NCBI RefSeq assembly: GCF_006345805.1
Contig: NC_043001.1
Span: forward strand, 126,542,001-126,606,000
DNA from: Octopus sinensis
Lineage: Eukaryota
Direction: 5' to 3'
Length of the DNA: 64,000 bases
Part shown: positions 5,617-63,300 of the stretch, in pieces
Numbering within the stretch: the stretch's first letter is position 1
Layout of the letters: each line of letters starts with the position of its first letter
Made by a program: the position numbers and the translations under genes
The notes under the pieces: generated by a model
Databases searched by the model: none
Told to the model about the DNA's origin: nothing
What the model saw: the letters and a program-made list of their open reading frames with translations, nothing else

Positions 5617-6840
5617 TGATGTCTTCGTAGAAATCGCGCAAATACTGTTGTATATGCAGCAATTATAGAGGGAAGAATGTAGACGGCAAAGTTATTTCAC
5701 TTCGTAGATACCCAGCAAACGTCGCTATTCGTCGTATTTAGCTTCAGAGATCGAGACTTGTGAGGAAAGTCTTTGTTTACATTGCAAATAGCCAGATTAG
5801 CTGCCAGCATTTCGTCAATTCTAATGGACCATTCACAGAACACCCCTTGCCATCCATTTTTCCAAACAAAGTATTTAAAACATCGGTACGTGCATGATCA
5901 TACACGCAGTACTCGGACCTTGGAAAGTAAGATGGTGGATTGTGAAACACAGGCAAATGCACCTGTGCTTACATATGAAGATGTGAAAAATGATAAGCAG
6001 AAGTTTCTATTTTGCACAGGAATACCAGATTCCATAACTTTTGATTGTTTTCTTTTTATGAAAACTACCAGACATGGTGAATCATCAGAGCAAGAGAGAC
6101 CCAGGCAGCTTCGATTAATTGATGAATTTTTTTTTGCATTTATGAGATTGCGACTTGGGCCACTATTAGAGGATTTAGCATATCGCTCCTGCATTAGCAC
6201 AATAACATGCGGCACAATATTTTATAAGTGGATTGATTACTTAGATGTCCAGTTATCCTTTCTGGTAATATGGCCATCAAGAAAAGCAGTAAATGACCAT
6301 ATGCCACCATCATTCCGTGCAAAGTATCCAACTTGTCGAGTTATAGTTGATTGTACAGAAATACGAACTGAGACTCCTTCTTCCCTACAAAGCAAATCAT
6401 TGATGTACAGTGATTATAAATCACGTATGACATGGAAGGGCTTAATAGGTATCAGTCCAGCTGGTGCAGTAACTTTTGTATTGTAGTTATGGGTAGGGAG
6501 TGTAAGTGATAAAGTTTAACACAGAAAAGCTATTTATTAGATCTCTGCCAAAATAGCGATTCCATAATGACCAACAAAGGATTTCTTATCTTTGATCTTA
6601 CAACAGCCGTGGGATCCAGTTGATCCTACTCCCGTTTAAAAACCAGAAAAGGCAACTATCCAAGAGGGAAGTTTTGGAATCACGGACTATTGCAAACCTT
6701 CGGATTCATGTTGAGCGTCAGATGGAAAGAATTAAGAACTTCAATATTTTGAAAGTAGTCATGCCTTTAAGTATGTCTCACCAAGTATCAAAAATCTGGA
6801 AATTGTGTGCTACATTGAACAATTTACAGCCACCACTTAT
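5617..6840 (+). pseudogene. PIF/Harbinger (ISL2EU-like) transposase pseudogene: THAP domain, HTH and DDE_Tnp_4-type core
   Basis: THAP-like CCICSNY...RRYPANVAIRRI*...SCQHF...LPSIFP; core IVDCTEIRTETPSS...YSDYK...KGLIGISPAGAVTF, then IANLRIHVERQMERIKNF. Several stops and frameshifts. Confidence 0.9.
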
Positions 6841-7161
6841 TCTGTTGGTCTCTTTTTGCCAAACCACTAAATTACATAAGCACACACCCCTGCGCAACAC
6901 TGGCTGTCAAGCGGTGGTGGAGGACAAAGGTGGTGAGTTGGAAGAAATGTTAGCACGCGAAATGCTTCGCGGTATTTCGTCTGCCGCTACGTTGTGAGTT
7001 CAAATTCCGCCGAGGTTGACTTTGCCTTTCATCCTTTCGGGGTCGATTAAATAAGTACCAGTTACGTACTGGAGTCAATATAATCGACTTAATCCGTTTG
7101 TCCTCTCTGTGTTTGGTCCCTTGTGGGTAGTAAAGAAATAGGTGGTGGAGGACAAACACAC

Positions 7162-11800: not shown

Positions 11801-11832
11801 ACATAATACATACATATACATATATATATAAC

Positions 11833-12400
11833 TTATTTCTATGCCAATATGCTGATAACAGACTTAAAAAAAAACTTCATCCTATATTAGTAGTAGACTT
11901 ATTACTACTCGCTATAGGGACTGGTAACCACTATGAGCTGTATTGGAGAACAGTTCACACGTATGTTGAGGCTGACCAAAGAATTTTATTTTTAGATATA
12001 TCTGGGGTACTTATATGTACTCATGATTTTTGTTTCGGCTTTTTTCCATGGGCGCCTGTAAGTATCTTATTTATATCCTTTCGTATTTTCTACTGAGGAG
12101 GAAAAAATCTATTATGAGATTAGTTCCGAAATTGATTCAATATAGAAATAACGATCTTTAAAAAAAAATTCTATCGGCCGGCTTTCCTCGATTTCAGCTC
12201 TTTGTGTTTTTTCTGTAGCGAGTAAATAATATGTGGAAATTGACGATTTAAAAGTCTGTTATCAGCATATTGGCATAGAAATAATTTTCTTTAGCCCTTA
12301 TTTATAAGTTGTTTATAATTTAAACCTTAAAGTTTTAATATGCTGCCACATTTATTGATGGAATTTTTTTTCTGTAAAAAAACTACATCCTATATTAGTA
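11833..12400 (+). mobile_element. ~508-bp terminally redundant hammerhead-bearing unit with a 33-bp inverted tail (retrozyme/pLTR-like)
   Basis: 25-bp direct repeat at 11868-11892 and 12376-12400 (1 mismatch); 11833-11865 is the exact reverse complement of 12252-12284; (TA)n on both sides. Confidence 0.75.
12087..12148 (+). ncRNA. Type I hammerhead ribozyme (CUGAGGA core, AUA cleavage triplet)
   Basis: Helix I UUUCUA/UAGAAA; core CUGAGGA; helix II GGAA..AAUCU-auuaug-AGAUU..UUCC; GAA; helix III AUUGA-u-UCAAU; H17 = A12142. Confidence 0.85.
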
Positions 12401-14558: not shown

Positions 14559-14792
14559 TATTTCTTTACTACCCACGAGGGGCCAAACACAGAGAGGACA
14601 AACAAGGATAGACAAACGGATTAAGTTGATTATATCGACCCCAGTGCGTAACTAGTACTTAATTTATCGATCCCCGAAAGGATGAAAGTCAAAGTCGACC
14701 TCGGCGGAATTTGAACTCAGAACGTAACGGCAGACGAAATACCACTAAGCATTTCGCTCGGCATGCTAACGTTTCTGCCAGCTCGCCGCCTT
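14559..14792 (-). mobile_element. Full-length SINE family B with an 11-bp TSD
   Basis: TSD atatcaatatc at 14548-14558 and 14793-14803. Confidence 0.92.
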
Positions 14793-15709
14793 ATATCAAT
14801 ATCGTTAAAGCGTCGGACACAATTTAGCAGTCTTTTCCCACCATTTTTAAAATTGGGGTACAAGATTACATGCTTACAGATTAATTGTTTAAACACTTGG
14901 GTGTTACACTCGTACCTCAACTCCTTCACCACTTCAGGAAAGTTTCAAGATCGCCTGGAAATGTTACATGCGATAGGCTAACATTTTACTCACGCAATGA
15001 TATGCTTCGTGTTTGCTTCATGCTATGGAATAAGGGGCTCTCAGAAGCCTAATATAAATCATTGTACATACTTTTTGTATACCTAGCGCTGTATTGTCTA
15101 ATATGTCCTCCTCTCTTAAATATAGTACGGTGCGAGTTAAAAAAAAATAGCTGATATTTTCAGTATGTCGAGCGACTACGTAAAGGCCCCGTCATTGGCT
15201 CATGTGAATGTTGCCACTTTTTTTATTTAACACCACATTAACCCTAATCAAATACACCATGACTAACCCGTCCTTTGCCTGTGTACAGAGAACCTCGGAA
15301 CATATCTCAAACGTACACATTTCTAATGCAGCAGGGCTGATATTTCTCGCAAAGTGAATTGACCAAGTGGAGGCTCTCTTATTGGCATGTGAGTTTGGAC
15401 GTGTAGTGGATGGTGTTTAAAATAATGTTCTCTGTGACCGAGCAACTCCTTGCAAAATATTATTTATTAGTAGGATGTGAAAGACATATTTTATCTGTCA
15501 GTCAAATAACCTGCCCTACTGACTGTCAGTTGCTTTGATTGTTTGTTTGTATATTTATTTATAAGTTTCCTCCTTCCCCCCCTCCACTTAATTTATATGA
15601 CTAAATTACTTGTATCATAACCATCACGAAAATCTTTCAATCTCATATATGTGCGTGTGTGCGTGTGTGTGGTTGCGTGCATTTATATGTATATATATAT
15701 ATATATATA

Positions 15710-18039: not shown

Positions 18040-18562
18040 CAACAACTGGTACAAAACATTTTTTCATCGAAAGTCAAAGTCGCACTCAGCAGAATTTGGA
18101 CTTGGAACATTAAACCAGAAGAAACACCGCTAAGCATATCCGTAGCGCAAACGATTCTACTTGTCCACTGCTTTTAATAATAATTTCTTCTACTATAGGC
18201 AAAAAGCCTGGTATTGTTGGGGGGGGGGGGGGCTTGTCGATAGCATCGACTTCAATTGGTTATTATTTCAGTGACATCGAAATGATGGTACGCAAAGTCG
18301 ACATTGGTGTAATTTGATCTGAGAACGTAAAGCCAGGAGAAAAATACCTATTTCTTTATTACCCACAAGGGGCTAAACACAGAGGGGACAAACAAGGACA
18401 GACATAGGTATTAAGTAGATTACATCGACCCCTGTGAGTAACTACTGGTACTTAATTTATCGACCCCGAAAGGATGAAAGGCAAAGTCGACCTCGGCGGA
18501 ATTTGAACACAGAACGTAACGGCAGACGAAATACCGCTTAGCATTTTGCCCGACGCGCAAAC
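18040..18562 (-). mobile_element. Cluster of SINE family B copies: older decayed copies plus a young copy at 18349-18562
   Basis: Repeated aaagtcgac..ggaatttg..agaacgt motifs. Confidence 0.8.
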
Positions 18563-19633: not shown

Positions 19634-19821
19634 ATATTATATATATATATATACATATGTCTATAAAATATAAATAGTAACGGGTAAAAACAAATGTAAA
19701 TAGGATAGAATAGATAGAAATCGTACTGATTAACCTAATGGAAGAATTCAGTTAGAGTAACCTGAATTTTTGGACGGAGACATACCATTAGTCATACGTA
19801 TATGCATATATGTATGCAAGT
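19115..19821. repeat. 160-bp identical direct repeat (19115-19274 and 19662-19821) separated by (CATA)n/(TA)n
   Basis: Direct comparison; period 547. Confidence 0.9.
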
Positions 19822-19903
19822 AAGCATACATACATACATACATACACACACACACGTATACATATATATATATTATATATATATTATATATATATATATA
19901 TAG

Positions 19904-19935
<32 letters not shown>

Positions 19936-20203
19936 TATATTTAGCAATTAAGGACAACCACTTAATAAGAAAACTTAACAAGAATTGTCAGGTAGCGTAA
20001 AAACCTCATAAGAGAAAAAATTTCGAAAATAATTATTTCTTATTGAACATATTAATTTATATATAGAGGGCATTATACATACATGCCAGAAGGCATTATA
20101 CATACATGCCAACCGCTAAGAAGGACAATTAGTCATTTCTAACCAAAAATATTACTAATCCCACCGAATGCAATTTTTCAAAGTAAGACATTTAAAAAAA
20201 TAT

Positions 20204-20251
20204 AGACCTGTATCACAGTGATTTCATACTTACGTACTCATCAGCAGGCCT
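20204..20251 (-). ncRNA. Type I hammerhead ribozyme, copy 1
   Basis: AGGCCUG CUGAUGA GUAC-GUAA-GUAU GAA AUCAC-U-GUGAU A CAGGUCU: 7-bp helix I, canonical core, AUA cleavage site. Confidence 0.92.
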
Positions 20252-20682
20252 GAATGTATTATAAATAAACAACGACCCTGCCCCGCTTAAGCCGATCAGC
20301 TAACTGCTCACATCAACGAAGCACATGGGTGAGTTTACATATATTACATCCGGATAAATGGCAAACTTTTACGAATTGCATTTCGGGAGAGGAAAAGTTT
20401 TTTCGGAATAAAAATTTAGCAATTAAGGACAACCACTTAATAAGGAAAACTTAACAAGAAATTGTCAGTAGATAGCGTAAAAACCTCATAAGAGAAAAAA
20501 TTTCGAAAATAATTATTTCTTATTGAACATATTAATTTATATATAGAGGGCATTATGCATACATGCCAGAAGGCATTATACATACATGCCAAACGCTAAG
20601 AGGGACAATTAGTCATTTCTACCAAAAATATTACTAATCCCACCGAATGCAATTTTTCAAAGTAAGACATTTAAAAAAATAT

Positions 20683-20730
20683 AGACCTGTATCACAGTGA
20701 TTTCATACTTACGTACTCATCAGCAGGCCT
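20683..20730 (-). ncRNA. Type I hammerhead ribozyme, copy 2
   Basis: Identical to copy 1. Confidence 0.92.
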
Positions 20731-21138
20731 GAATGTATATAATAAACAACGACGACCCTGCCCCGCTTAAGCCGATCAGCTAACTGCTCAACATCAACGA
20801 AGCACATGGGTGAGTTTACATATATTACATCCGGATAAATGGCAAACTTTTACGAATTGCATTTCGGGAGAGGAAAAGTTTTTTCGGAATAAAAATTTAG
20901 CAATTAAGGACAACCACTTAATAAGGAAAACTTAACAAGAAATTGTCAGGTAGATAGCGTAAAAACCTCATAAGAAAAAAATTTCGAAAATATATTTCTT
21001 ATTGAACATATTAATTTATTATATATAGAGGCATTATACATACATGCCAAACGCTAAGAGGGACAATTAGTCATTTCTACCAAAAATATTACTAATCCAC
21101 CGAATGCAATTTTTCAAAGTAAGACATTAAAAAAATAT

Positions 21139-21186
21139 AGACCTGTATCACAGTGATTTCATACTTACGTACTCATCAGCAGGCCT
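21139..21186 (-). ncRNA. Type I hammerhead ribozyme, copy 3
   Basis: Identical to copy 1. Confidence 0.92.
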
Positions 21187-21260
21187 GAATGTATTATAAT
21201 AAACAACGACCCTGCCCCGCTTAAGCCGATCAGCTAACTGCTCAACATCAACGAAGCACA

Positions 21261-21308
21261 TGGGCTGCTGATGAGTACGTAAGTATGAAATCACTGTGAT
21301 ACAGGTCT
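21261..21308 (+). ncRNA. Type I hammerhead ribozyme, copy 4 (inverted; helix I 5' arm altered by the junction)
   Basis: UGGGCUG CUGAUGA GUACGUAAGUAU GAA AUCACUGUGAU A CAGGUCU. Confidence 0.8.
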
Positions 21309-21807
21309 ATATTTTTTTAAATGTCTTACTTTGAAAAATTGCATTCGGTGGGATTAGTAATATTTTTGGTAGAAATGACTAATTGTCCCTCTTAGCGTTT
21401 GGCATGTATGTATAATGCCTTCTGGCATGTATGTATAATGCCCTCTATATATAAATTATATATATGTATATACATACATACATATGTGTATGCGTGCGTG
21501 TGTGTTTGCATGTATACGTATAAATATATAAGCATATATTATTACTCTATGCGGTATCAGTGTTTCGTATGTATGTATATATATGTATGTGTGTATGCGT
21601 GTGTGTATGTGTACATATGTGTATACATATATACATATTCACACGCATACACACGCACAAAATGAAACACCTTTATTCAAGCAAGAAAACCGTTTATTCA
21701 TATATAGTTGCAAGCATGCATACGGCACGTAAACACACACACACACAAACACATACACGCAAATACACACAAATACGCACACAAAAATATACGCTTTCAT
21801 ATATATG

Positions 21808-24199: not shown

Positions 24200-25520
24200 G
24201 GGTGGGTTTGGTGTCTGTGGGGAAGGGTGGGTGAGAGAGGGAATGGGTGGGGTGGGTATTGTTTGAGGTTCTACTTTACTCTGTCCTTTCTATCTCTTCC
24301 TTTTTCTTCCTTCAGCTACCACCCACTATTCTTCGTTTCTCTTTTCTTCCTGTTGCACCTTCTGCTCCTTTCTGACATCCGCTGGACTTCTCGGCTTCTG
24401 TAGAGAGCAGTGTACTCTAATGAGACCTTTTTGGCCACATTTAAGGCGACGAGGGATTCTGCCCTCCACCCACACTCTCAATATCTCCAGTGGTCACCGT
24501 TTCCACCACATTTTCCAGTGTTTCTGCAGTGCCATGTATGATCAGGTTCAACGTTTGGCCTTTCCATACTGATCTTTTTGTTTCCGTGGCTTGGAGTACG
24601 GCTATTTCTTCTTTACTTCCTAGAAGAACAGCCGCCTCAACCCAAGCTACATCTATTTCCGGTGGGATGCCCTCCACCCTAATTCTGGAAGTCCTTCTTC
24701 CAAGATAAGTAGGTAGAAGGACCACTTTATCCGACTTTACTGTGGCTACTGTGTATTCTTTTGCTTTTCCATCTGACTTGAAATGAACCACAATTGTTCC
24801 ATATCTGCTTCCTCTGGCAAGATATGTTATGCCTTGCCAGACGGAGCACATGGTCTTTTCTATTATTTTTGCCTCAACATTTTCAATTTTCCTTTCTTTC
24901 ACTGAGTACACCTTATATATTACTGCTTTCTTACTCTTCCAATACTTTCTGGGATGGTGACAACTTAACGTCATCACCTACCCTACATGCCATCTTCTCA
25001 TATTTTTCTGTTTGTCAGATCCACCTCCTTTTTTGTGACATCTTATTTCTTTACTACCCACAAGGGGCTAAACATAGAGGGGACAAACAAGGACAGACAA
25101 ATGGATTAAGCCGATTACATCGACCCCAGTGCGTAACTGGTACTTAATTTATCGACCCCGAAAGGATGAAAGGCAAAGTCGACCTCGGCGGAATTTGAAC
25201 TCAGAACGTAACGGCAGACGAAATACCACAAAGCATTTCGCCCGGCATGCTAACGCCTCTGCCCACTTCCGAAAACTTTTCTTCCTTAAGCATTTCTCCA
25301 TCTTATCAACTGCTCGTACGGGCTCCCCCTCCGAAGAGGACAATTCGGACCCACTAAGGTCCGAATAGAACATGTTTCTTACTGTTGACATTGCTGACCC
25401 TCCTCAAGACGGAGAGAAAGCACAACCAGAAAACCGCTGCAGAGCAGCACAAGACAGTCGACTACTCCTCACACAATCAGTAAACACACCAGCATGATAC
25501 GAACTCTATGAGCGAGAAGG
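24200..25520 (-). mobile_element. Non-LTR retrotransposon ORF1 (gag-like) region with a decayed CCHC zinc knuckle and 5' leader
   Basis: ORF 24441..24977, then in a shifted frame VEGRIPRRLKCGQKGLIRVHC (Cx2Cx4Hx4C with C>R and H>L); N-terminus at 25149..25391 is split by a SINE. Confidence 0.6.
25043..25265 (-). mobile_element. SINE family B inserted in the LINE ORF1
   Basis: Matches the family B body and tail. Confidence 0.9.
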
Positions 25521-46082: not shown

Positions 46083-46189
46083 CGGAAATTGTTCTTTAGA
46101 GAGAGGAGATGTGCTAGAGAGTGGTTTTTGACACGTAAACATCTACACAAACATATTACATGGACATACAGATACAGAACCTCTGGCAC

Positions 46190-46312
46190 ACACACACCGC
46201 CATGCGTTTACACCGACGTACAACTATACACACAGACACCACACACACACACACACCGCCATGCGTTTACACCGACGTACAACTATACACACAGACACAC
46301 ACACACACACAC
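46190..46312. repeat. Tandem duplication of ~58 bp bounded by (CA)n
   Basis: ccgccatgcgtttacaccgacgtacaactatacacacagacac occurs twice. Confidence 0.9.
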
Positions 46313-46838
46313 ACTACAGAACAAAGAAGCCGGAGTTTTGAAGTGCATATATGTTTGTACCTATCCGCAGGGTATTTTTCAGTGCTTTTGAAATTTCAGT
46401 TTCTATGCATGCATGCTTACATATGTCTATACGTAGAAGATGTGTGTTTATGTTTATCGGCATGAAGTGTCAGAACAGTGAGTGGCACAGGTTTTATAAA
46501 GTATATATATGCTGTATATGTCATTATGTCAGTTGGCTGACATGACTTATTTCTACGTTTCCTGAACGGTGTGAAAATGGAGACATTTTGTTTTTGAAGT
46601 TTTACAACGGTTAATCAGTTACAATTACCCCCCTTTCACACTAACACTTCTCCACATTTTTGCCTTCATTTCCATGTTGTTGTTTAGTCCAGGCACCCTC
46701 AACCACCGAGCTGTAGACCATCACCGGAACGCACAGAAAGAATAAGATTTTAAATTTTATTTCTATTTGATTGACTATCGCAGTTTGCGGAATGTTTTGC
46801 ATTATATATGTATTATATAATTGATATATGTATTATAA

Positions 46839-48246: not shown

Positions 48247-48705
48247 TATTTCTTTATTGCCCACAAGGGGCTAAACACAGAGGGGACGAACAAGGACAGA
48301 CAAACGGATTAAGTCGATTACATCGACTCCAGTGCGTAACTGGTTTGTCCCCTCTGTGTTTAGCCCCTTGTGGGTAATAAAGAAATAGGTACTTAATTTA
48401 TCGACCCCAAAAGGATGAAAGGCAAAGTCGACCTCGGCGGAATTTGGACTCGAACGTAGCGGCAGACGAAATACCTATTTCTTTATTACCCACAAGGGGC
48501 TAAACACAGAGGGAACAAACAAGGACAGACATAGGTATTAAGTCGATTACATCGATCCCAGTTCGTAACTGGTACTTAATTTATCGACCCCGAAAGGATG
48601 AAAGGCAAAGTCGACCTCGGCGGAATTTGAACCCACAACGTAACGCACACGAAATACCGCTATGCATTTCGCCTGGCGTGCTAACGATTCTGCCAGCTCA
48701 CCGCC
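48247..48705 (-). mobile_element. Composite of nested and partly inverted SINE family B copies
   Basis: Tail, inverted tail, body, then a second full body and head. Confidence 0.85.
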
Positions 48706-60419: not shown

Positions 60420-60595
60420 AGAGGGGACTAGTCGATTACATTGACACCAGTGTTTCACTGGTACTTAATTTATCGATCTCGAAAGGATGAAAGGCAAAGT
60501 CGACCTGGGCGGAATTTGAACTCAGAACGTAAGAAACGAAATGCCGCTAATCACTTTGTCCAACGTGCTAACTATTCTGCCAGCCCACCGCCTTA
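60420..60595 (-). mobile_element. SINE family B variant
   Basis: Family B body with an alternative tail. Confidence 0.85.
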
Positions 60596-60884
60596 ATAAT
60601 AATAATAGTCATAATAATAATAATAATAATAATGATAATAATAATAATAATAATAACAACGATGATAATTTTTTTTTTTAAGTCAGAGAGTTTTAAAAAA
60701 TCAGATGAACATTTCGCTCTTTCATGATTCCTCGGTGCATTTTTGTAGATTTAAGCAAAAATCACGAATTGTATTATGATTTCTCTCCGCAAGAAACAGA
60801 AATCAAATATAATATCTGAACTTATACATACATACATACATACATACATACATACATACATACATACAAACATACATACATACA

Positions 60885-62889: not shown

Positions 62890-63300
62890 TGAGCTGGCAG
62901 AAGCGTTAGCACGCCGGGCGAAATGCTTAGCGGTATTTCGTCTGCCGTTACGTTATGAGTTCAAATTCCGCCGAGGTCGACTTTGCCTTTCATCCTTTCG
63001 GGGTCGATAAATTAAGTACCAGTTACGCACTGGGGTCGATGTAATCGATGTAATCCGTTTGTCTGTCCTTGTTTGTCCCCTCTATGTTTAGCCCCTTGTG
63101 CGTAGTAAAGAAATAGGTATTTCGTCTGCCGTGACGCTCTGAGTTCAAATTCCGCCGCGGTCGACTTTGCCTTTCATCTTTTCGGGGTCGATTAAATAAG
63201 TACCAGTTACGCACTGGAGTCGTTGTAATTGACTTAATCCCTTTGTCTGTCCTTGTTTGTCCCATCTATGTTTAGCACCTTGTGGGCAATAAAGAAATAA
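62890..63300 (+). mobile_element. Dimeric or nested SINE family B
   Basis: Head-body-tail, then a restart at gtatttcgtctgcc (63117) with a second body and tail. Confidence 0.9.

What the first reader, a model, noticed from the sequence alone, without database searches (positions are those of the whole stretch)
19941..21264. Retrozyme-like tandem array: every ~477-bp unit carries an intact type I hammerhead ribozyme
Seen in sequence: three head-to-tail non-coding units, each with the identical minus-strand motif AGGCCUG-CUGAUGA-GUAC-GUAA-GUAU-GAA-AUCAC-U-GUGAU-A-CAGGUCU (7-bp helix I, canonical core, GNRA-capped helix II, near-palindromic helix III, AUA site). Established: tandem HHR repeats (newt satellite 2, Schistosoma Sm-alpha, non-LTR retrozymes) self-cleave to monomers that can circularise and are thought to be mobilised by Penelope-like RT. 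Inference: cuts at 21146/5, 20690/89 and 20211/10 would release monomers of 456 and 479 nt. The 1-nt helix III loop suggests dimeric cleavage between neighbouring units. I cannot tell whether this cephalopod-like family has been described.
Basis: partly seen in the sequence, partly recalled or inferred. Interest (0 to 1): 0.93.

Follow-up and report, generated by a model that had tools for sequence, protein, structure and literature searches.

The report
Octopus-type hammerhead retrozyme tandem array
This is a short tandem array of a non-coding mobile element whose RNA carries a self-cutting hammerhead ribozyme that should work only when two copies pair; it is a new, probably octopus, member of a known element class, not a new kind of system.

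Summary
Window 19941-21264 holds 2.8 head-to-tail units of 456-481 bp. Each unit carries an identical minus-strand type I hammerhead (HHR) motif: complete catalytic core, 7-bp helix I, 4-bp GUAA-capped helix II, 11-nt near-palindromic helix III and an AUA cleavage site. A structural descriptor finds it against 0.01 hits expected per shuffled window. The predicted cut sites and the 456- and 479-nt monomers are correct.

- A fourth copy lies on the + strand (21262-21462), an inverted 5'-truncated partial unit joined head-to-head to the array.
- Helix II closes with G10.1-U11.1 rather than G-C.
- Rfam scores the motif far below threshold.
- A second, unrelated hammerhead element with the same architecture sits at 11830-12400.

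Folding supports dimeric cleavage. The minimum-free-energy fold of a real two-hammerhead transcript is the double hammerhead. The monomer prefers an inactive fold.

The insertion is a partial tandem with an inverted 5'-truncated copy, embedded in (TA)n. That matches Penelope-like element (PLE) integration.

The best reading is a non-LTR retrozyme of an octopod genome. It is a new member of a known kind, of modest interest. Catalysis, circular RNA and copy number were not tested.

The parts
19941..21264 (-). Tandem array of the retrozyme unit, 2.8 copies. It consists of a 5' partial unit (21264-21146, 119 nt), monomer A (21145-20690, 456 nt), monomer B (20689-20211, 479 nt) and a 3' partial unit (20210-19941, 270 nt).
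   Evidence: TRF period 480, 94% matches; alignment and blastn of the units; 33% GC; no ORF above 51 aa.
21139..21186 (-). Hammerhead 1 (type I): AGGCCUG-CUGAUGA-GUAC-GUAA-GUAU-GAA-AUCACUGUGAU-A-CAGGUCU. Predicted cut between 21146 and 21145.
   Evidence: Descriptor hit and exact core. It lies in one arm of a 59-nt perfect inverted repeat with the + strand copy (I5). It would be sequestered in read-through RNA (-123.8 kcal/mol, z -18).
20683..20730 (-). Hammerhead 2, identical motif. Predicted cut between 20690 and 20689.
   Evidence: It forms a double hammerhead with hammerhead 1 in the MFE of transcript 21200-20670.
20204..20251 (-). Hammerhead 3, identical motif. Predicted cut between 20211 and 20210.
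   Evidence: Rfam RF02275 aligns the core and helices II and III at 16.6 bits, E 0.053, below the gathering score of 52.
21262..21462 (+). Inverted, 5'-truncated partial unit joined head-to-head to the upstream end of the array. It runs from inside helix I of the hammerhead to unit position about 157. Its hammerhead (21265-21304) keeps only 3 bp of helix I.
   Evidence: Inverted repeat I1, 197 nt, 99% complementary to 20533-20729; blastn 98.8% over 162 nt; relaxed descriptor; junction sequence.
19857..19940 (.). (TA)n microsatellite abutting the 3' end of the array; probable insertion target.
   Evidence: TRF; boundary sequence. (TA)n is a reported preferred PLE target (PMC8557442).
21463..21500 (.). 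TA/TATG-rich microsatellite abutting the outer (3') end of the inverted copy. The copy ends inside the unit's own UAUAUAUAAAUUA tract.
   Evidence: Boundary sequence.
11830..12400 (+). Second, unrelated hammerhead element, a solo unit of about 508 bp. It has a type I hammerhead-like motif at 12087-12148 (UUUCUA-CUGAGGA-GGAA..UUCC-GAA-AUUGAUUCAAU-A-UAGAAA), a 25-nt terminal direct repeat (11868-11892 and 12376-12400), a 41-nt inverted fragment at its upstream end (11830-11870, copied from 12247-12287), and (TA)n on both sides.
   Evidence: Descriptor; repeats; no similarity to unit 1; unit fold -130 kcal/mol, z -5.4. No Rfam hammerhead hit.

Best explanation
The array is a genomic copy of a non-LTR retrozyme. 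This is a non-coding, non-autonomous retroelement carrying a type I hammerhead, in what is most likely an octopod genome.

Proposed cycle:
1. The minus strand is transcribed through several units.
2. Two neighbouring hammerheads pair through their 11-nt near-palindromic helix III (10 bp plus a central U-U) to form a double hammerhead. Each cuts after A17.
3. This releases 456- or 479-nt monomers. Helix I and a compact self-paired fold hold the monomer ends together.
4. A cellular RtcB-type ligase closes the monomer into a circle. In the monomer the active hammerhead fold is disfavoured, so the circle is stable.
5. The reverse transcriptase and GIY-YIG endonuclease of an autonomous Penelope-like element (PLE) copy the RNA into a (TA)n microsatellite. 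This leaves a partial tandem plus an inverted 5'-truncated copy.

Shown here: the motif, its statistics, the fold predictions and the insertion architecture. Inferred: transcription, cleavage, ligation and mobilisation by a PLE.
For: Motif: there are three identical complete type I motifs, against 0.01 expected per window. The Rfam hammerhead model aligns the whole core and helices II and III, though below threshold.

Dimer mode:
- The isolated hammerhead fold (-9.4 kcal/mol) loses to an alternative fold in which core bases pair with helix III bases (-12.4).
- The helix III hairpin alone scores 0, but its self-duplex scores -10.1. The two-strand co-fold MFE (-30.5) is a double hammerhead.
- In the real 531-nt transcript 21200-20670 the unconstrained MFE (-126.6) is exactly the double hammerhead. 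Two monomeric hammerheads cost +9.2 kcal/mol.

Retrozyme-like RNA: the 479-nt monomer folds to -130.5 kcal/mol (z -5.8). Its complement reaches only -95.8 (z -4.0). Helix I joins the two ends of the monomer in that fold.

Class features: 33% GC, no ORF, no tRNA module, and no RT or endonuclease ORF nearby.

PLE-style insertion:
- An inverted 5'-truncated copy abuts the upstream end, and (TA)n lies at both outer ends.
- The same architecture appears in a second, unrelated hammerhead element at 11830-12400.
- PMC8557442 describes this signature.
- Hammerhead pairs on opposite strands 100-700 bp apart are reported for PLEs in PMC4209133.

Host:
- The best named hit of a transposase remnant is Octopus bimaculoides, and many repeat families are shared with an O. 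bimaculoides locus.
- O. vulgaris has 30 recently active Penelope families (PMC13282606).
- The units differ by a single substitution (A vs B), consistent with a recent insertion.
Against: - No experimental or expression data are available.
- No other copy of the family could be retrieved. There is therefore no covariation or conservation evidence beyond this locus.
- The four hammerheads are identical, but so is nearly everything else in the units. Their identity says nothing about selection.
- G10.1-U11.1 replaces the near-universal G-C pair and may weaken catalysis.
- No Rfam hammerhead family reaches its gathering score.
- No PLE coding sequence was found among the ORFs tested in the window. 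That test covered only part of the six-frame space.
- The first hammerhead would be trapped in a very stable hairpin (about 65 bp in the predicted fold) if transcription enters from the inverted copy.
- The unit length of 456-481 bp lies at or just above the 150-450 bp range quoted for the class.
Confidence: 0.75

Rival explanations
1. The array is a dead relic or an ordinary satellite. The units descend from a hammerhead-bearing element, but the ribozyme no longer works (G10.1-U11.1, weak helix III). The array grew by unequal crossing-over or replication slippage rather than by reverse transcription of circular or multimeric RNA.
For: Non-canonical 10.1-11.1 pair and sub-threshold Rfam score. 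The monomer MFE is not the hammerhead fold. There is no evidence of selection on the motif within the array. The 2026 preprint discusses local amplification of retrozyme units by unequal crossover.
Against: All thirteen invariant core positions, the A15.1-U16.1 pair and the H17 site are intact in four copies. The double hammerhead is the predicted MFE of the real transcript. Axolotl retrozyme hammerheads with a U-U mismatch at the base of helix II still cleave as dimers (PMC7229834). The array is very young (1 substitution between units). The inverted 5'-truncated copy and the (TA)n embedding point to retrotransposition rather than crossover.
Confidence: 0.12
2. The array is a fragment of an autonomous Penelope-like element, not an independent non-autonomous family. 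It would be tandem or solo pseudo-LTRs left by 5'-truncated insertion of a full PLE whose pLTR carries this hammerhead.
For: PLE insertions are heavily 5'-truncated, form partial tandems with inverted copies, and carry type I hammerheads in their pLTRs (PMC8557442 and PMC4209133). Xenopus retrozymes are sister to the pLTRs of PLEs (2026 preprint).
Against: There are 2.8 consecutive units with no ORF-derived sequence between or beside them. A pLTR pair normally flanks an RT-EN ORF of about 3 kb. The unit folds into a compact, strand-specific structure like retrozyme circular RNAs.
Confidence: 0.1
3. The feature is a chance motif or an assembly artefact, such as a collapsed or expanded repeat or a chimeric palindrome from a long read.
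For: Differences between units are almost all small indels (A vs B: 1 substitution, 11 gap events). That pattern is typical of residual long-read error. Complex PLE-type insertions are known to cause assembly problems (PMC8557442).
Against: The motif is expected 0.01 times per window and is found three to five times. The head-to-head junction is not a true palindrome: the arms are separated by 76 nt and the two copies break at different unit positions. A missed-adapter artefact would not give that pattern. An independent element 8 kb away shows the same architecture.
Confidence: 0.03

Closest known systems
Metazoan non-LTR retrozymes (Cervera and de la Pena 2020, PMC7229834; Li et al. 2026 preprint 10.64898/2026.07.22.740005)
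   Same: Tandem non-coding units of a few hundred bp. One type I hammerhead per unit. Low GC (33%). No LTR, PBS or PPT. A highly self-paired monomer RNA whose ends are joined by helix I. Co-occurrence with PLEs in the host lineage.
   Different: The unit (456-481 bp) is at or above the quoted 150-450 bp range. Helix III is an 11-nt near-palindrome instead of 1-2 bp plus a palindromic loop. Helix II closes with G-U. No cephalopod family is described in those papers. Expression and circular RNA were not tested here.
Newt satellite 2 and axolotl HHR_Amex1/2 retrozymes (dimer-dependent type I hammerheads)
   Same: Weak intramolecular helix III. Efficient cleavage is expected only as a double hammerhead between tandem copies. 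Amex2 also has a weakened base of helix II (PMC7229834; PMC6155905).
   Different: Helix III here offers 10 intermolecular base pairs around a U-U mismatch, a much longer dimer interface. There is no sequence relationship. The host is a mollusc rather than an amphibian.
Hammerheads in the pseudo-LTRs of Penelope-like elements (Cervera and de la Pena 2014, PMC4209133; Craig et al. 2021, PMC8557442)
   Same: Small palindromic helix III and proposed dimer action. Pairs of motifs on opposite strands 100-700 bp apart. Partial tandems, an inverted 5'-truncated copy at the upstream end, and a bias for microsatellite, especially (TA)n, targets.
   Different: No RT or GIY-YIG ORF is attached. Helices I (7 bp) and II (4 bp, GNRA loop) have canonical sizes, unlike the minimal PLE variants with a long helix II and short helix I.
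Schistosoma Sm-alpha hammerhead repeats
   Same: An abundant invertebrate repeat carrying a type I hammerhead.
   Different: From my own knowledge, Sm-alpha is a SINE-like element with a tRNA-derived Pol III promoter, and its hammerhead works as a monomer. ARAGORN finds no tRNA-like module here, and the hammerhead-sense strand carries five T runs of 5-7 nt per unit. Both argue against Pol III.
Plant LTR retrozymes (PMC4918200)
   Same: Non-autonomous retroelements that are proposed to spread through hammerhead-processed circular RNA.
   Different: They carry type III hammerheads in true LTRs, with PBS, PPT and 4-bp TSDs, GC above 55%, and are mobilised by Gypsy elements. None of these features is present here.

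Membership tests
Hammerhead ribozyme, type I topology | Conserved core C3-U4-G5-A6-N7-G8-A9, G12-A13-A14, A15.1-U16.1 pair, H17 (not G) at the cleavage site | tested here: met
   CUGAUGA ... GAA-A...U-A is present in all copies. The Rfam HH9 alignment matches every core position.
Hammerhead ribozyme, type I topology | Three helices around the core, with helix I open and helices II and III closed | tested here: met
   Helix I has 7 bp including one G-U. Helix II has 4 bp with a GUAA loop. Helix III has 4 bp plus a triloop within one molecule, or 10 bp between two molecules.
Hammerhead ribozyme, type I topology | G10.1-C11.1 pair closing helix II (near-universal in natural hammerheads; from my own knowledge) | tested here: not met
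   The pair is G10.1-U11.1 in all four copies. G10.1 itself is retained. A weakened helix II base has a precedent in axolotl Amex2.
Hammerhead ribozyme, type I topology | Score at or above the gathering threshold of an Rfam hammerhead model (clan CL00010) | tested here: not met
   No hit at gathering score. Best hit is RF02275 at 16.6 bits against 52, E 0.053 on a 91-nt search.
Hammerhead ribozyme, type I topology | Loop 1 - loop 2 tertiary contacts | tested here: inconclusive
   Loop 2 is GUAA. Helix I is followed by about 9 unpaired nt (AUAUUUUUU) at a junction in the monomer fold. The mussel retrozyme hammerheads also lack most of the conserved nucleotides of the archetypal contacts.
Hammerhead ribozyme, type I topology | Site-specific self-cleavage | not testable with these tools
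   Needs in vitro transcription of one-unit and two-unit constructs.
Metazoan non-LTR retrozyme | Tandem repeats of about 150-450 bp with a type I hammerhead in every repeat | tested here: met
   2.8 units, three hammerheads. Unit length of 456-481 bp is marginally above the quoted range.
Metazoan non-LTR retrozyme | Low GC (below 45-50%), non-coding, no LTR, PBS or PPT | tested here: met
   33% GC. Longest ORF is 51 aa. No terminal repeats other than the tandem itself.
Metazoan non-LTR retrozyme | Highly self-paired monomer RNA | tested here: met
   -130.5 kcal/mol, z -5.84, 0 of 100 shuffles as good. This is stronger than the complementary strand.
Metazoan non-LTR retrozyme | Expressed as linear and circular monomer RNA | not testable with these tools
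   No transcriptome data are available here.
Metazoan non-LTR retrozyme | Multiple dispersed genomic copies (a mobile family) | tested here: inconclusive
   The window has only this locus. No copy was found in 20.5 kb of O. bimaculoides or in a 16.8-kb ENA contig of unidentified origin, nor in the metagenome or viral collections, nor in protein space. No animal genome collection was available.
Metazoan non-LTR retrozyme | Co-existence with autonomous PLEs in the host | tested here: inconclusive
   None among the 26 ORFs scanned in the window. The literature reports recently active Penelope families in O. vulgaris and PLEs in cephalopods.
Penelope-like element (autonomous) pLTR | Repeats flank an ORF encoding RT plus GIY-YIG endonuclease | tested here: not met
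   No ORF lies between or next to the units, and no Pfam hits were found in the flanking ORFs.
Penelope-like element (autonomous) pLTR | Insertion architecture: partial tandem, inverted 5'-truncated copy at the 5' end, microsatellite target | tested here: met
   compared with the description in PMC8557442. This is a mark of the integration machinery and is shared by non-autonomous passengers.

The most novel reading that the evidence does not exclude
Octopods may carry at least two unrelated, recently mobile retrozyme families that share one unusual design: an 11-nt helix III palindrome with a central U (AUCAC-U-GUGAU and AUUGA-U-UCAAU). This design would make cleavage strictly dependent on a double hammerhead. 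Their head-to-head, (TA)n-embedded insertions, with both 3' ends facing outward, would be a direct structural footprint of two-ended (twin-priming-like) target-primed reverse transcription by PLE machinery on retrozyme RNA. That would be locus-level evidence for the PLE-retrozyme link, which has so far been argued from co-occurrence and pLTR similarity. Because Rfam misses them, such elements and their circular RNAs could be abundant yet unannotated in cephalopod genomes and transcriptomes.
Probability: 0.3. Interest if true: 0.55.

Novelty: new member of a known kind. Interest (0 to 1): 0.35.

Why it matters
The class is established. The locus adds four modest points.

1. It extends characterised retrozymes to cephalopods. 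There, hammerheads have only been counted by Rfam (235 loci in the giant squid, PMC6962438) and never described as mobile elements in the literature I could search.
2. It shows a blind spot. This family scores 16.6 bits against a 52-bit threshold, so standard ncRNA annotation will miss it.
3. The junctions are clean: a partial tandem plus an inverted 5'-truncated copy in (TA)n, seen twice in one window for unrelated families. This gives locus-level support for integration by PLE machinery.
4. If expressed, the elements would give abundant structured circular RNAs and long perfect hairpins. That is relevant to RNA biology in animals known for extensive RNA editing. This last link is speculation.

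Tried and rejected
- Rfam at gathering score over the whole window gave nothing. At E up to 10 over 1.9 kb it gave only microsatellite or hairpin look-alikes of miRNA families. These included a 'MIR4227' hit that is simply the head-to-head hairpin.
- Public DNA scans with CTGATGAGTACNNNNGTATGAAATCAC gave 0 hits in metagenome and viral contigs.
- A relaxed 19-base pattern gave 9 metagenomic loci. All lack helices I and III and show no similarity to the unit beyond the searched core pattern itself, so they are chance matches.
- A protein-space search with concatenated stop-to-stop translations of the unit found no hit.
- I fetched 20.5 kb around the O. bimaculoides relative of the nearby transposase and a 16.8-kb ENA contig. 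Neither holds a hammerhead or a copy of the unit.
- A literal search of the ribozyme sequence in 8 million papers gave no hit.
- Pfam on 26 ORFs across the window found only Harbinger-type transposase remnants and no RT or GIY-YIG. Roughly 220 shorter ORFs were not scanned.
- ARAGORN found no tRNA-like module, so an Sm-alpha-like SINE design is rejected.
- I considered using hammerhead identity among copies as evidence of selection. I rejected this because the whole units are nearly identical.
- I considered a missed-adapter palindrome artefact for the inverted copy. I rejected it because the junction is asymmetric.
Full report
OBSERVATION. Tandem Repeats Finder reports a single long-period array at 19939-21264: period 480, 2.8 copies, 94% matches, 4% indels. 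The 34-nt hammerhead core with helices II and III (CTGATGAGTACGTAAGTATGAAATCACTGTGATA) occurs exactly at 21146-21179, 20690-20723 and 20211-20244 on the minus strand. None are expected in shuffles.

I wrote a generic type I descriptor: CUGANGA, a closed helix II, GAA, a closed helix III starting A...U, H17, and helix I of at least 4 bp. It recovers the three minus-strand motifs with 7-bp helix I, 4-bp helix II and 5+5 helix III. It gives 0.01 hits per dinucleotide-shuffled window (200 shuffles). A relaxed version gives 5 hits against 0.015 expected.

The array is a 119-nt 5' partial unit, then 456 nt, 479 nt and a 270-nt 3' partial unit. The longest ORF in the units is 51 aa. GC is 33%.

THE RIBOZYME. 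The motif reads AGGCCUG-CUGAUGA-GUAC-GUAA-GUAU-GAA-AUCAC-U-GUGAU-A-CAGGUCU. All invariant core positions, the A15.1-U16.1 pair and an AUA (NUH) site are present. There are two deviations.
- The pair that closes helix II is G10.1-U11.1 instead of G-C.
- Helix III cannot have a 1-nt loop. Within one molecule it is at most 4 bp with a CUG triloop.

Rfam finds no hammerhead at gathering score in the window, nor at E up to 10 in a 1.9-kb search. In a 91-nt search, RF02275 (Hammerhead_HH9) aligns the complete core and helices II and III, but at 16.6 bits against a gathering score of 52 (E 0.053). So curated models recognise the motif, but routine annotation would not report it.

DIMER PREDICTION.
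- The 48-nt motif alone prefers a fold in which UGAU of the core pairs with AUCA of helix III (-12.4 kcal/mol). The hammerhead fold scores -9.4.
- The 11-nt helix III segment has no stable hairpin (0.0) but a self-duplex of -10.1. Two motifs co-fold into a double hammerhead at -30.5.
- I then folded the real 531-nt minus-strand transcript 21200-20670, which contains two neighbouring hammerheads and the 456-nt monomer between them. Its unconstrained MFE (-126.6) is exactly the double hammerhead: helix III of copy 1 pairs with helix III of copy 2, the 3' strand of helix I of copy 1 pairs with the 5' strand of helix I of copy 2 (so it encloses the monomer), both helix II hairpins form, and both cores stay unpaired. 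Forcing two separate monomeric hammerheads costs +9.2 kcal/mol.
- This agrees with the rule established for newt, viroid and most metazoan type I hammerheads: a weak palindromic helix III makes cleavage depend on a second copy (PMC4209133; PMC6155905; PMC7229834).

THE MONOMER RNA. The 479-nt monomer in hammerhead polarity folds to -130.5 kcal/mol (z -5.84, 0 of 100 shuffles). Helix I joins its two ends. The complementary strand reaches only -95.8 (z -3.96). The strand asymmetry and compactness fit the 'highly self-paired' circular RNAs of retrozymes.

ARCHITECTURE OF THE INSERTION. Directly upstream of the array, in hammerhead sense, lies an inverted partial unit at 21262-21462 on the + strand. 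It is 197 nt and 99% complementary to 20533-20729 (98.8% by blastn).
- Its 5' end is truncated inside helix I, so its hammerhead keeps only 3 bp of helix I.
- Its 3' end faces outward and stops inside the unit's own UAUAUAUAAAUUA tract, against a TA-rich microsatellite.
- The 3' end of the array faces the other way and stops at ...GCUAAAU against (TA)n at 19857-19940.
- The structure is therefore two copies joined 5'-to-5', with both 3' ends outward in TA repeats.

[quoted passage not shown] Cervera and de la Pena also noted pairs of PLE hammerheads 100-700 bp apart on opposite strands. The junction is asymmetric, with arms 76 nt apart and different break points. That rules out a simple long-read palindrome artefact.

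One consequence follows for transcripts that enter from the inverted copy. The first hammerhead (21186-21139) would be buried in a near-perfect hairpin (-123.8 kcal/mol, z -18). In that case only the 479-nt monomer, cut by hammerheads 2 and 3, would be released with confidence.

A SECOND ELEMENT. The descriptor also hit 12087-12148 on the + strand: UUUCUA-CUGAGGA-GGAA[20 nt, itself a stem-loop]UUCC-GAA-AUUGA-U-UCAAU-A-UAGAAA. It sits in an element at 11830-12400 that has no similarity to the first unit but the same layout.
- It has (TA)n on both sides and a 25-nt terminal direct repeat spaced 508 bp.
- It has a 41-nt inverted fragment at the upstream end.
- Its unit RNA is strongly structured (-130 kcal/mol, z -5.4).
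- Rfam gives no hammerhead hit for it, so it is less certain.

Both families have an 11-nt helix III palindrome with a central U. They differ at three base pairs, each changed on both sides. My first descriptor did not require that exact geometry.

HOST AND PARTNER ELEMENTS. A Harbinger-type transposase remnant at 5773-6997 has its best named relative in Octopus bimaculoides (81% identity), followed by other molluscs. Many short interspersed repeats in the window match a 20-kb O. bimaculoides locus at 70-88% identity. An octopod genome is therefore likely.

I found no RT or GIY-YIG remnant in 26 ORFs across the window, including those flanking the array. The literature reports Penelope elements in coleoids and 30 recently active Penelope families in O. 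vulgaris (PMC13282606), so a mobilising partner is plausible.

AGE AND SELECTION. Units A and B differ by 1 substitution and 11 small gaps. The inverted copy differs from B by 2 substitutions and 3 gaps. The array is therefore young or homogenised, and part of the indel noise may be sequencing error. With this little divergence, the perfect identity of the four hammerheads is not evidence of selection.

WHAT IS KNOWN. Non-LTR retrozymes are defined as tandem, non-coding, low-GC repeats of 150-450 bp, each with a type I hammerhead. They are expressed as circular RNAs of about 170-400 nt, and PLEs are the proposed mobilisers (PMC7229834). A 2026 preprint argues from co-occurrence and pLTR similarity that they derive from PLEs. 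Neither paper covers cephalopods. The giant squid genome paper lists 235 Rfam 'hammerhead 1' loci without further analysis. No paper in the library combines octopus with a hammerhead retrozyme, and none prints this ribozyme sequence.

VERDICT. The locus is a new, probably octopod, member of the known class of non-LTR retrozymes. It has a clear predicted double-hammerhead mechanism and a PLE-type insertion footprint. Catalysis, expression, circularisation and copy number are untested, because no animal genome or transcriptome collection was available. Interest is modest (0.35).

Noticed in passing
window 11830-12400 (+), hammerhead-like motif at 12087-12148: A second hammerhead element, unrelated in sequence. 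It is a solo unit of about 508 bp with a 25-nt terminal redundancy, a 41-nt inverted fragment at its upstream end and (TA)n on both sides. Its helix III has the same 5-bp/U/5-bp palindrome design. Rfam does not recognise it.
   Followed up: partly
window 21120-21330: The head-to-head junction of the array and its inverted copy forms a near-perfect hairpin (about 65 bp in the predicted fold; -123.8 kcal/mol, z -18). It produced a spurious sub-threshold 'MIR4227' Rfam match. A read-through transcript would be a long dsRNA and so a possible substrate for small-RNA or editing pathways. That last point is speculation.
   Followed up: partly
window 5773-6997 (+): Remnants of a Harbinger/PIF-type transposase (HTH_Tnp_4 and DDE_Tnp_4), split over at least two ORFs. 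The closest named relative is an Octopus bimaculoides protein at 81% identity.
   Followed up: partly
window 60421-60607, 62890-63048, 48541-48705, 25109-25263, 18414-18552, 14624-14801, 6927-7089 and others: Many copies of short interspersed repeats, about 140-200 bp, match the same segments of an O. bimaculoides locus (L001 17310-17486 and 11590-11990) at 70-88% identity. These are probably octopod SINE families. ARAGORN finds no intact tRNA.
   Followed up: no
window 19941-21264: The units differ almost only by 1-3-nt indels in homopolymer or simple runs, plus one 23-nt copy-number difference (one copy of GGCATGTATGTATAATGCCTTCT in unit A, two in the others). Substitutions are nearly absent. 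This may partly reflect long-read indel error in the assembly.
   Followed up: partly
window 19700-19940 and 21450-21800: Sub-threshold Rfam matches to mir-297, mir-466 and similar families fall on TG/CA/TA microsatellites. They are artefacts of simple sequence.
   Followed up: yes
window 24441-24977 (-): A 178-aa ORF of normal amino-acid composition has no Pfam match. It may be part of an unclassified repeat or gene.
   Followed up: no
window 46187-46314: A 59-bp unit repeated 2.2 times at 98% identity, embedded in CA-rich sequence.
   Followed up: no
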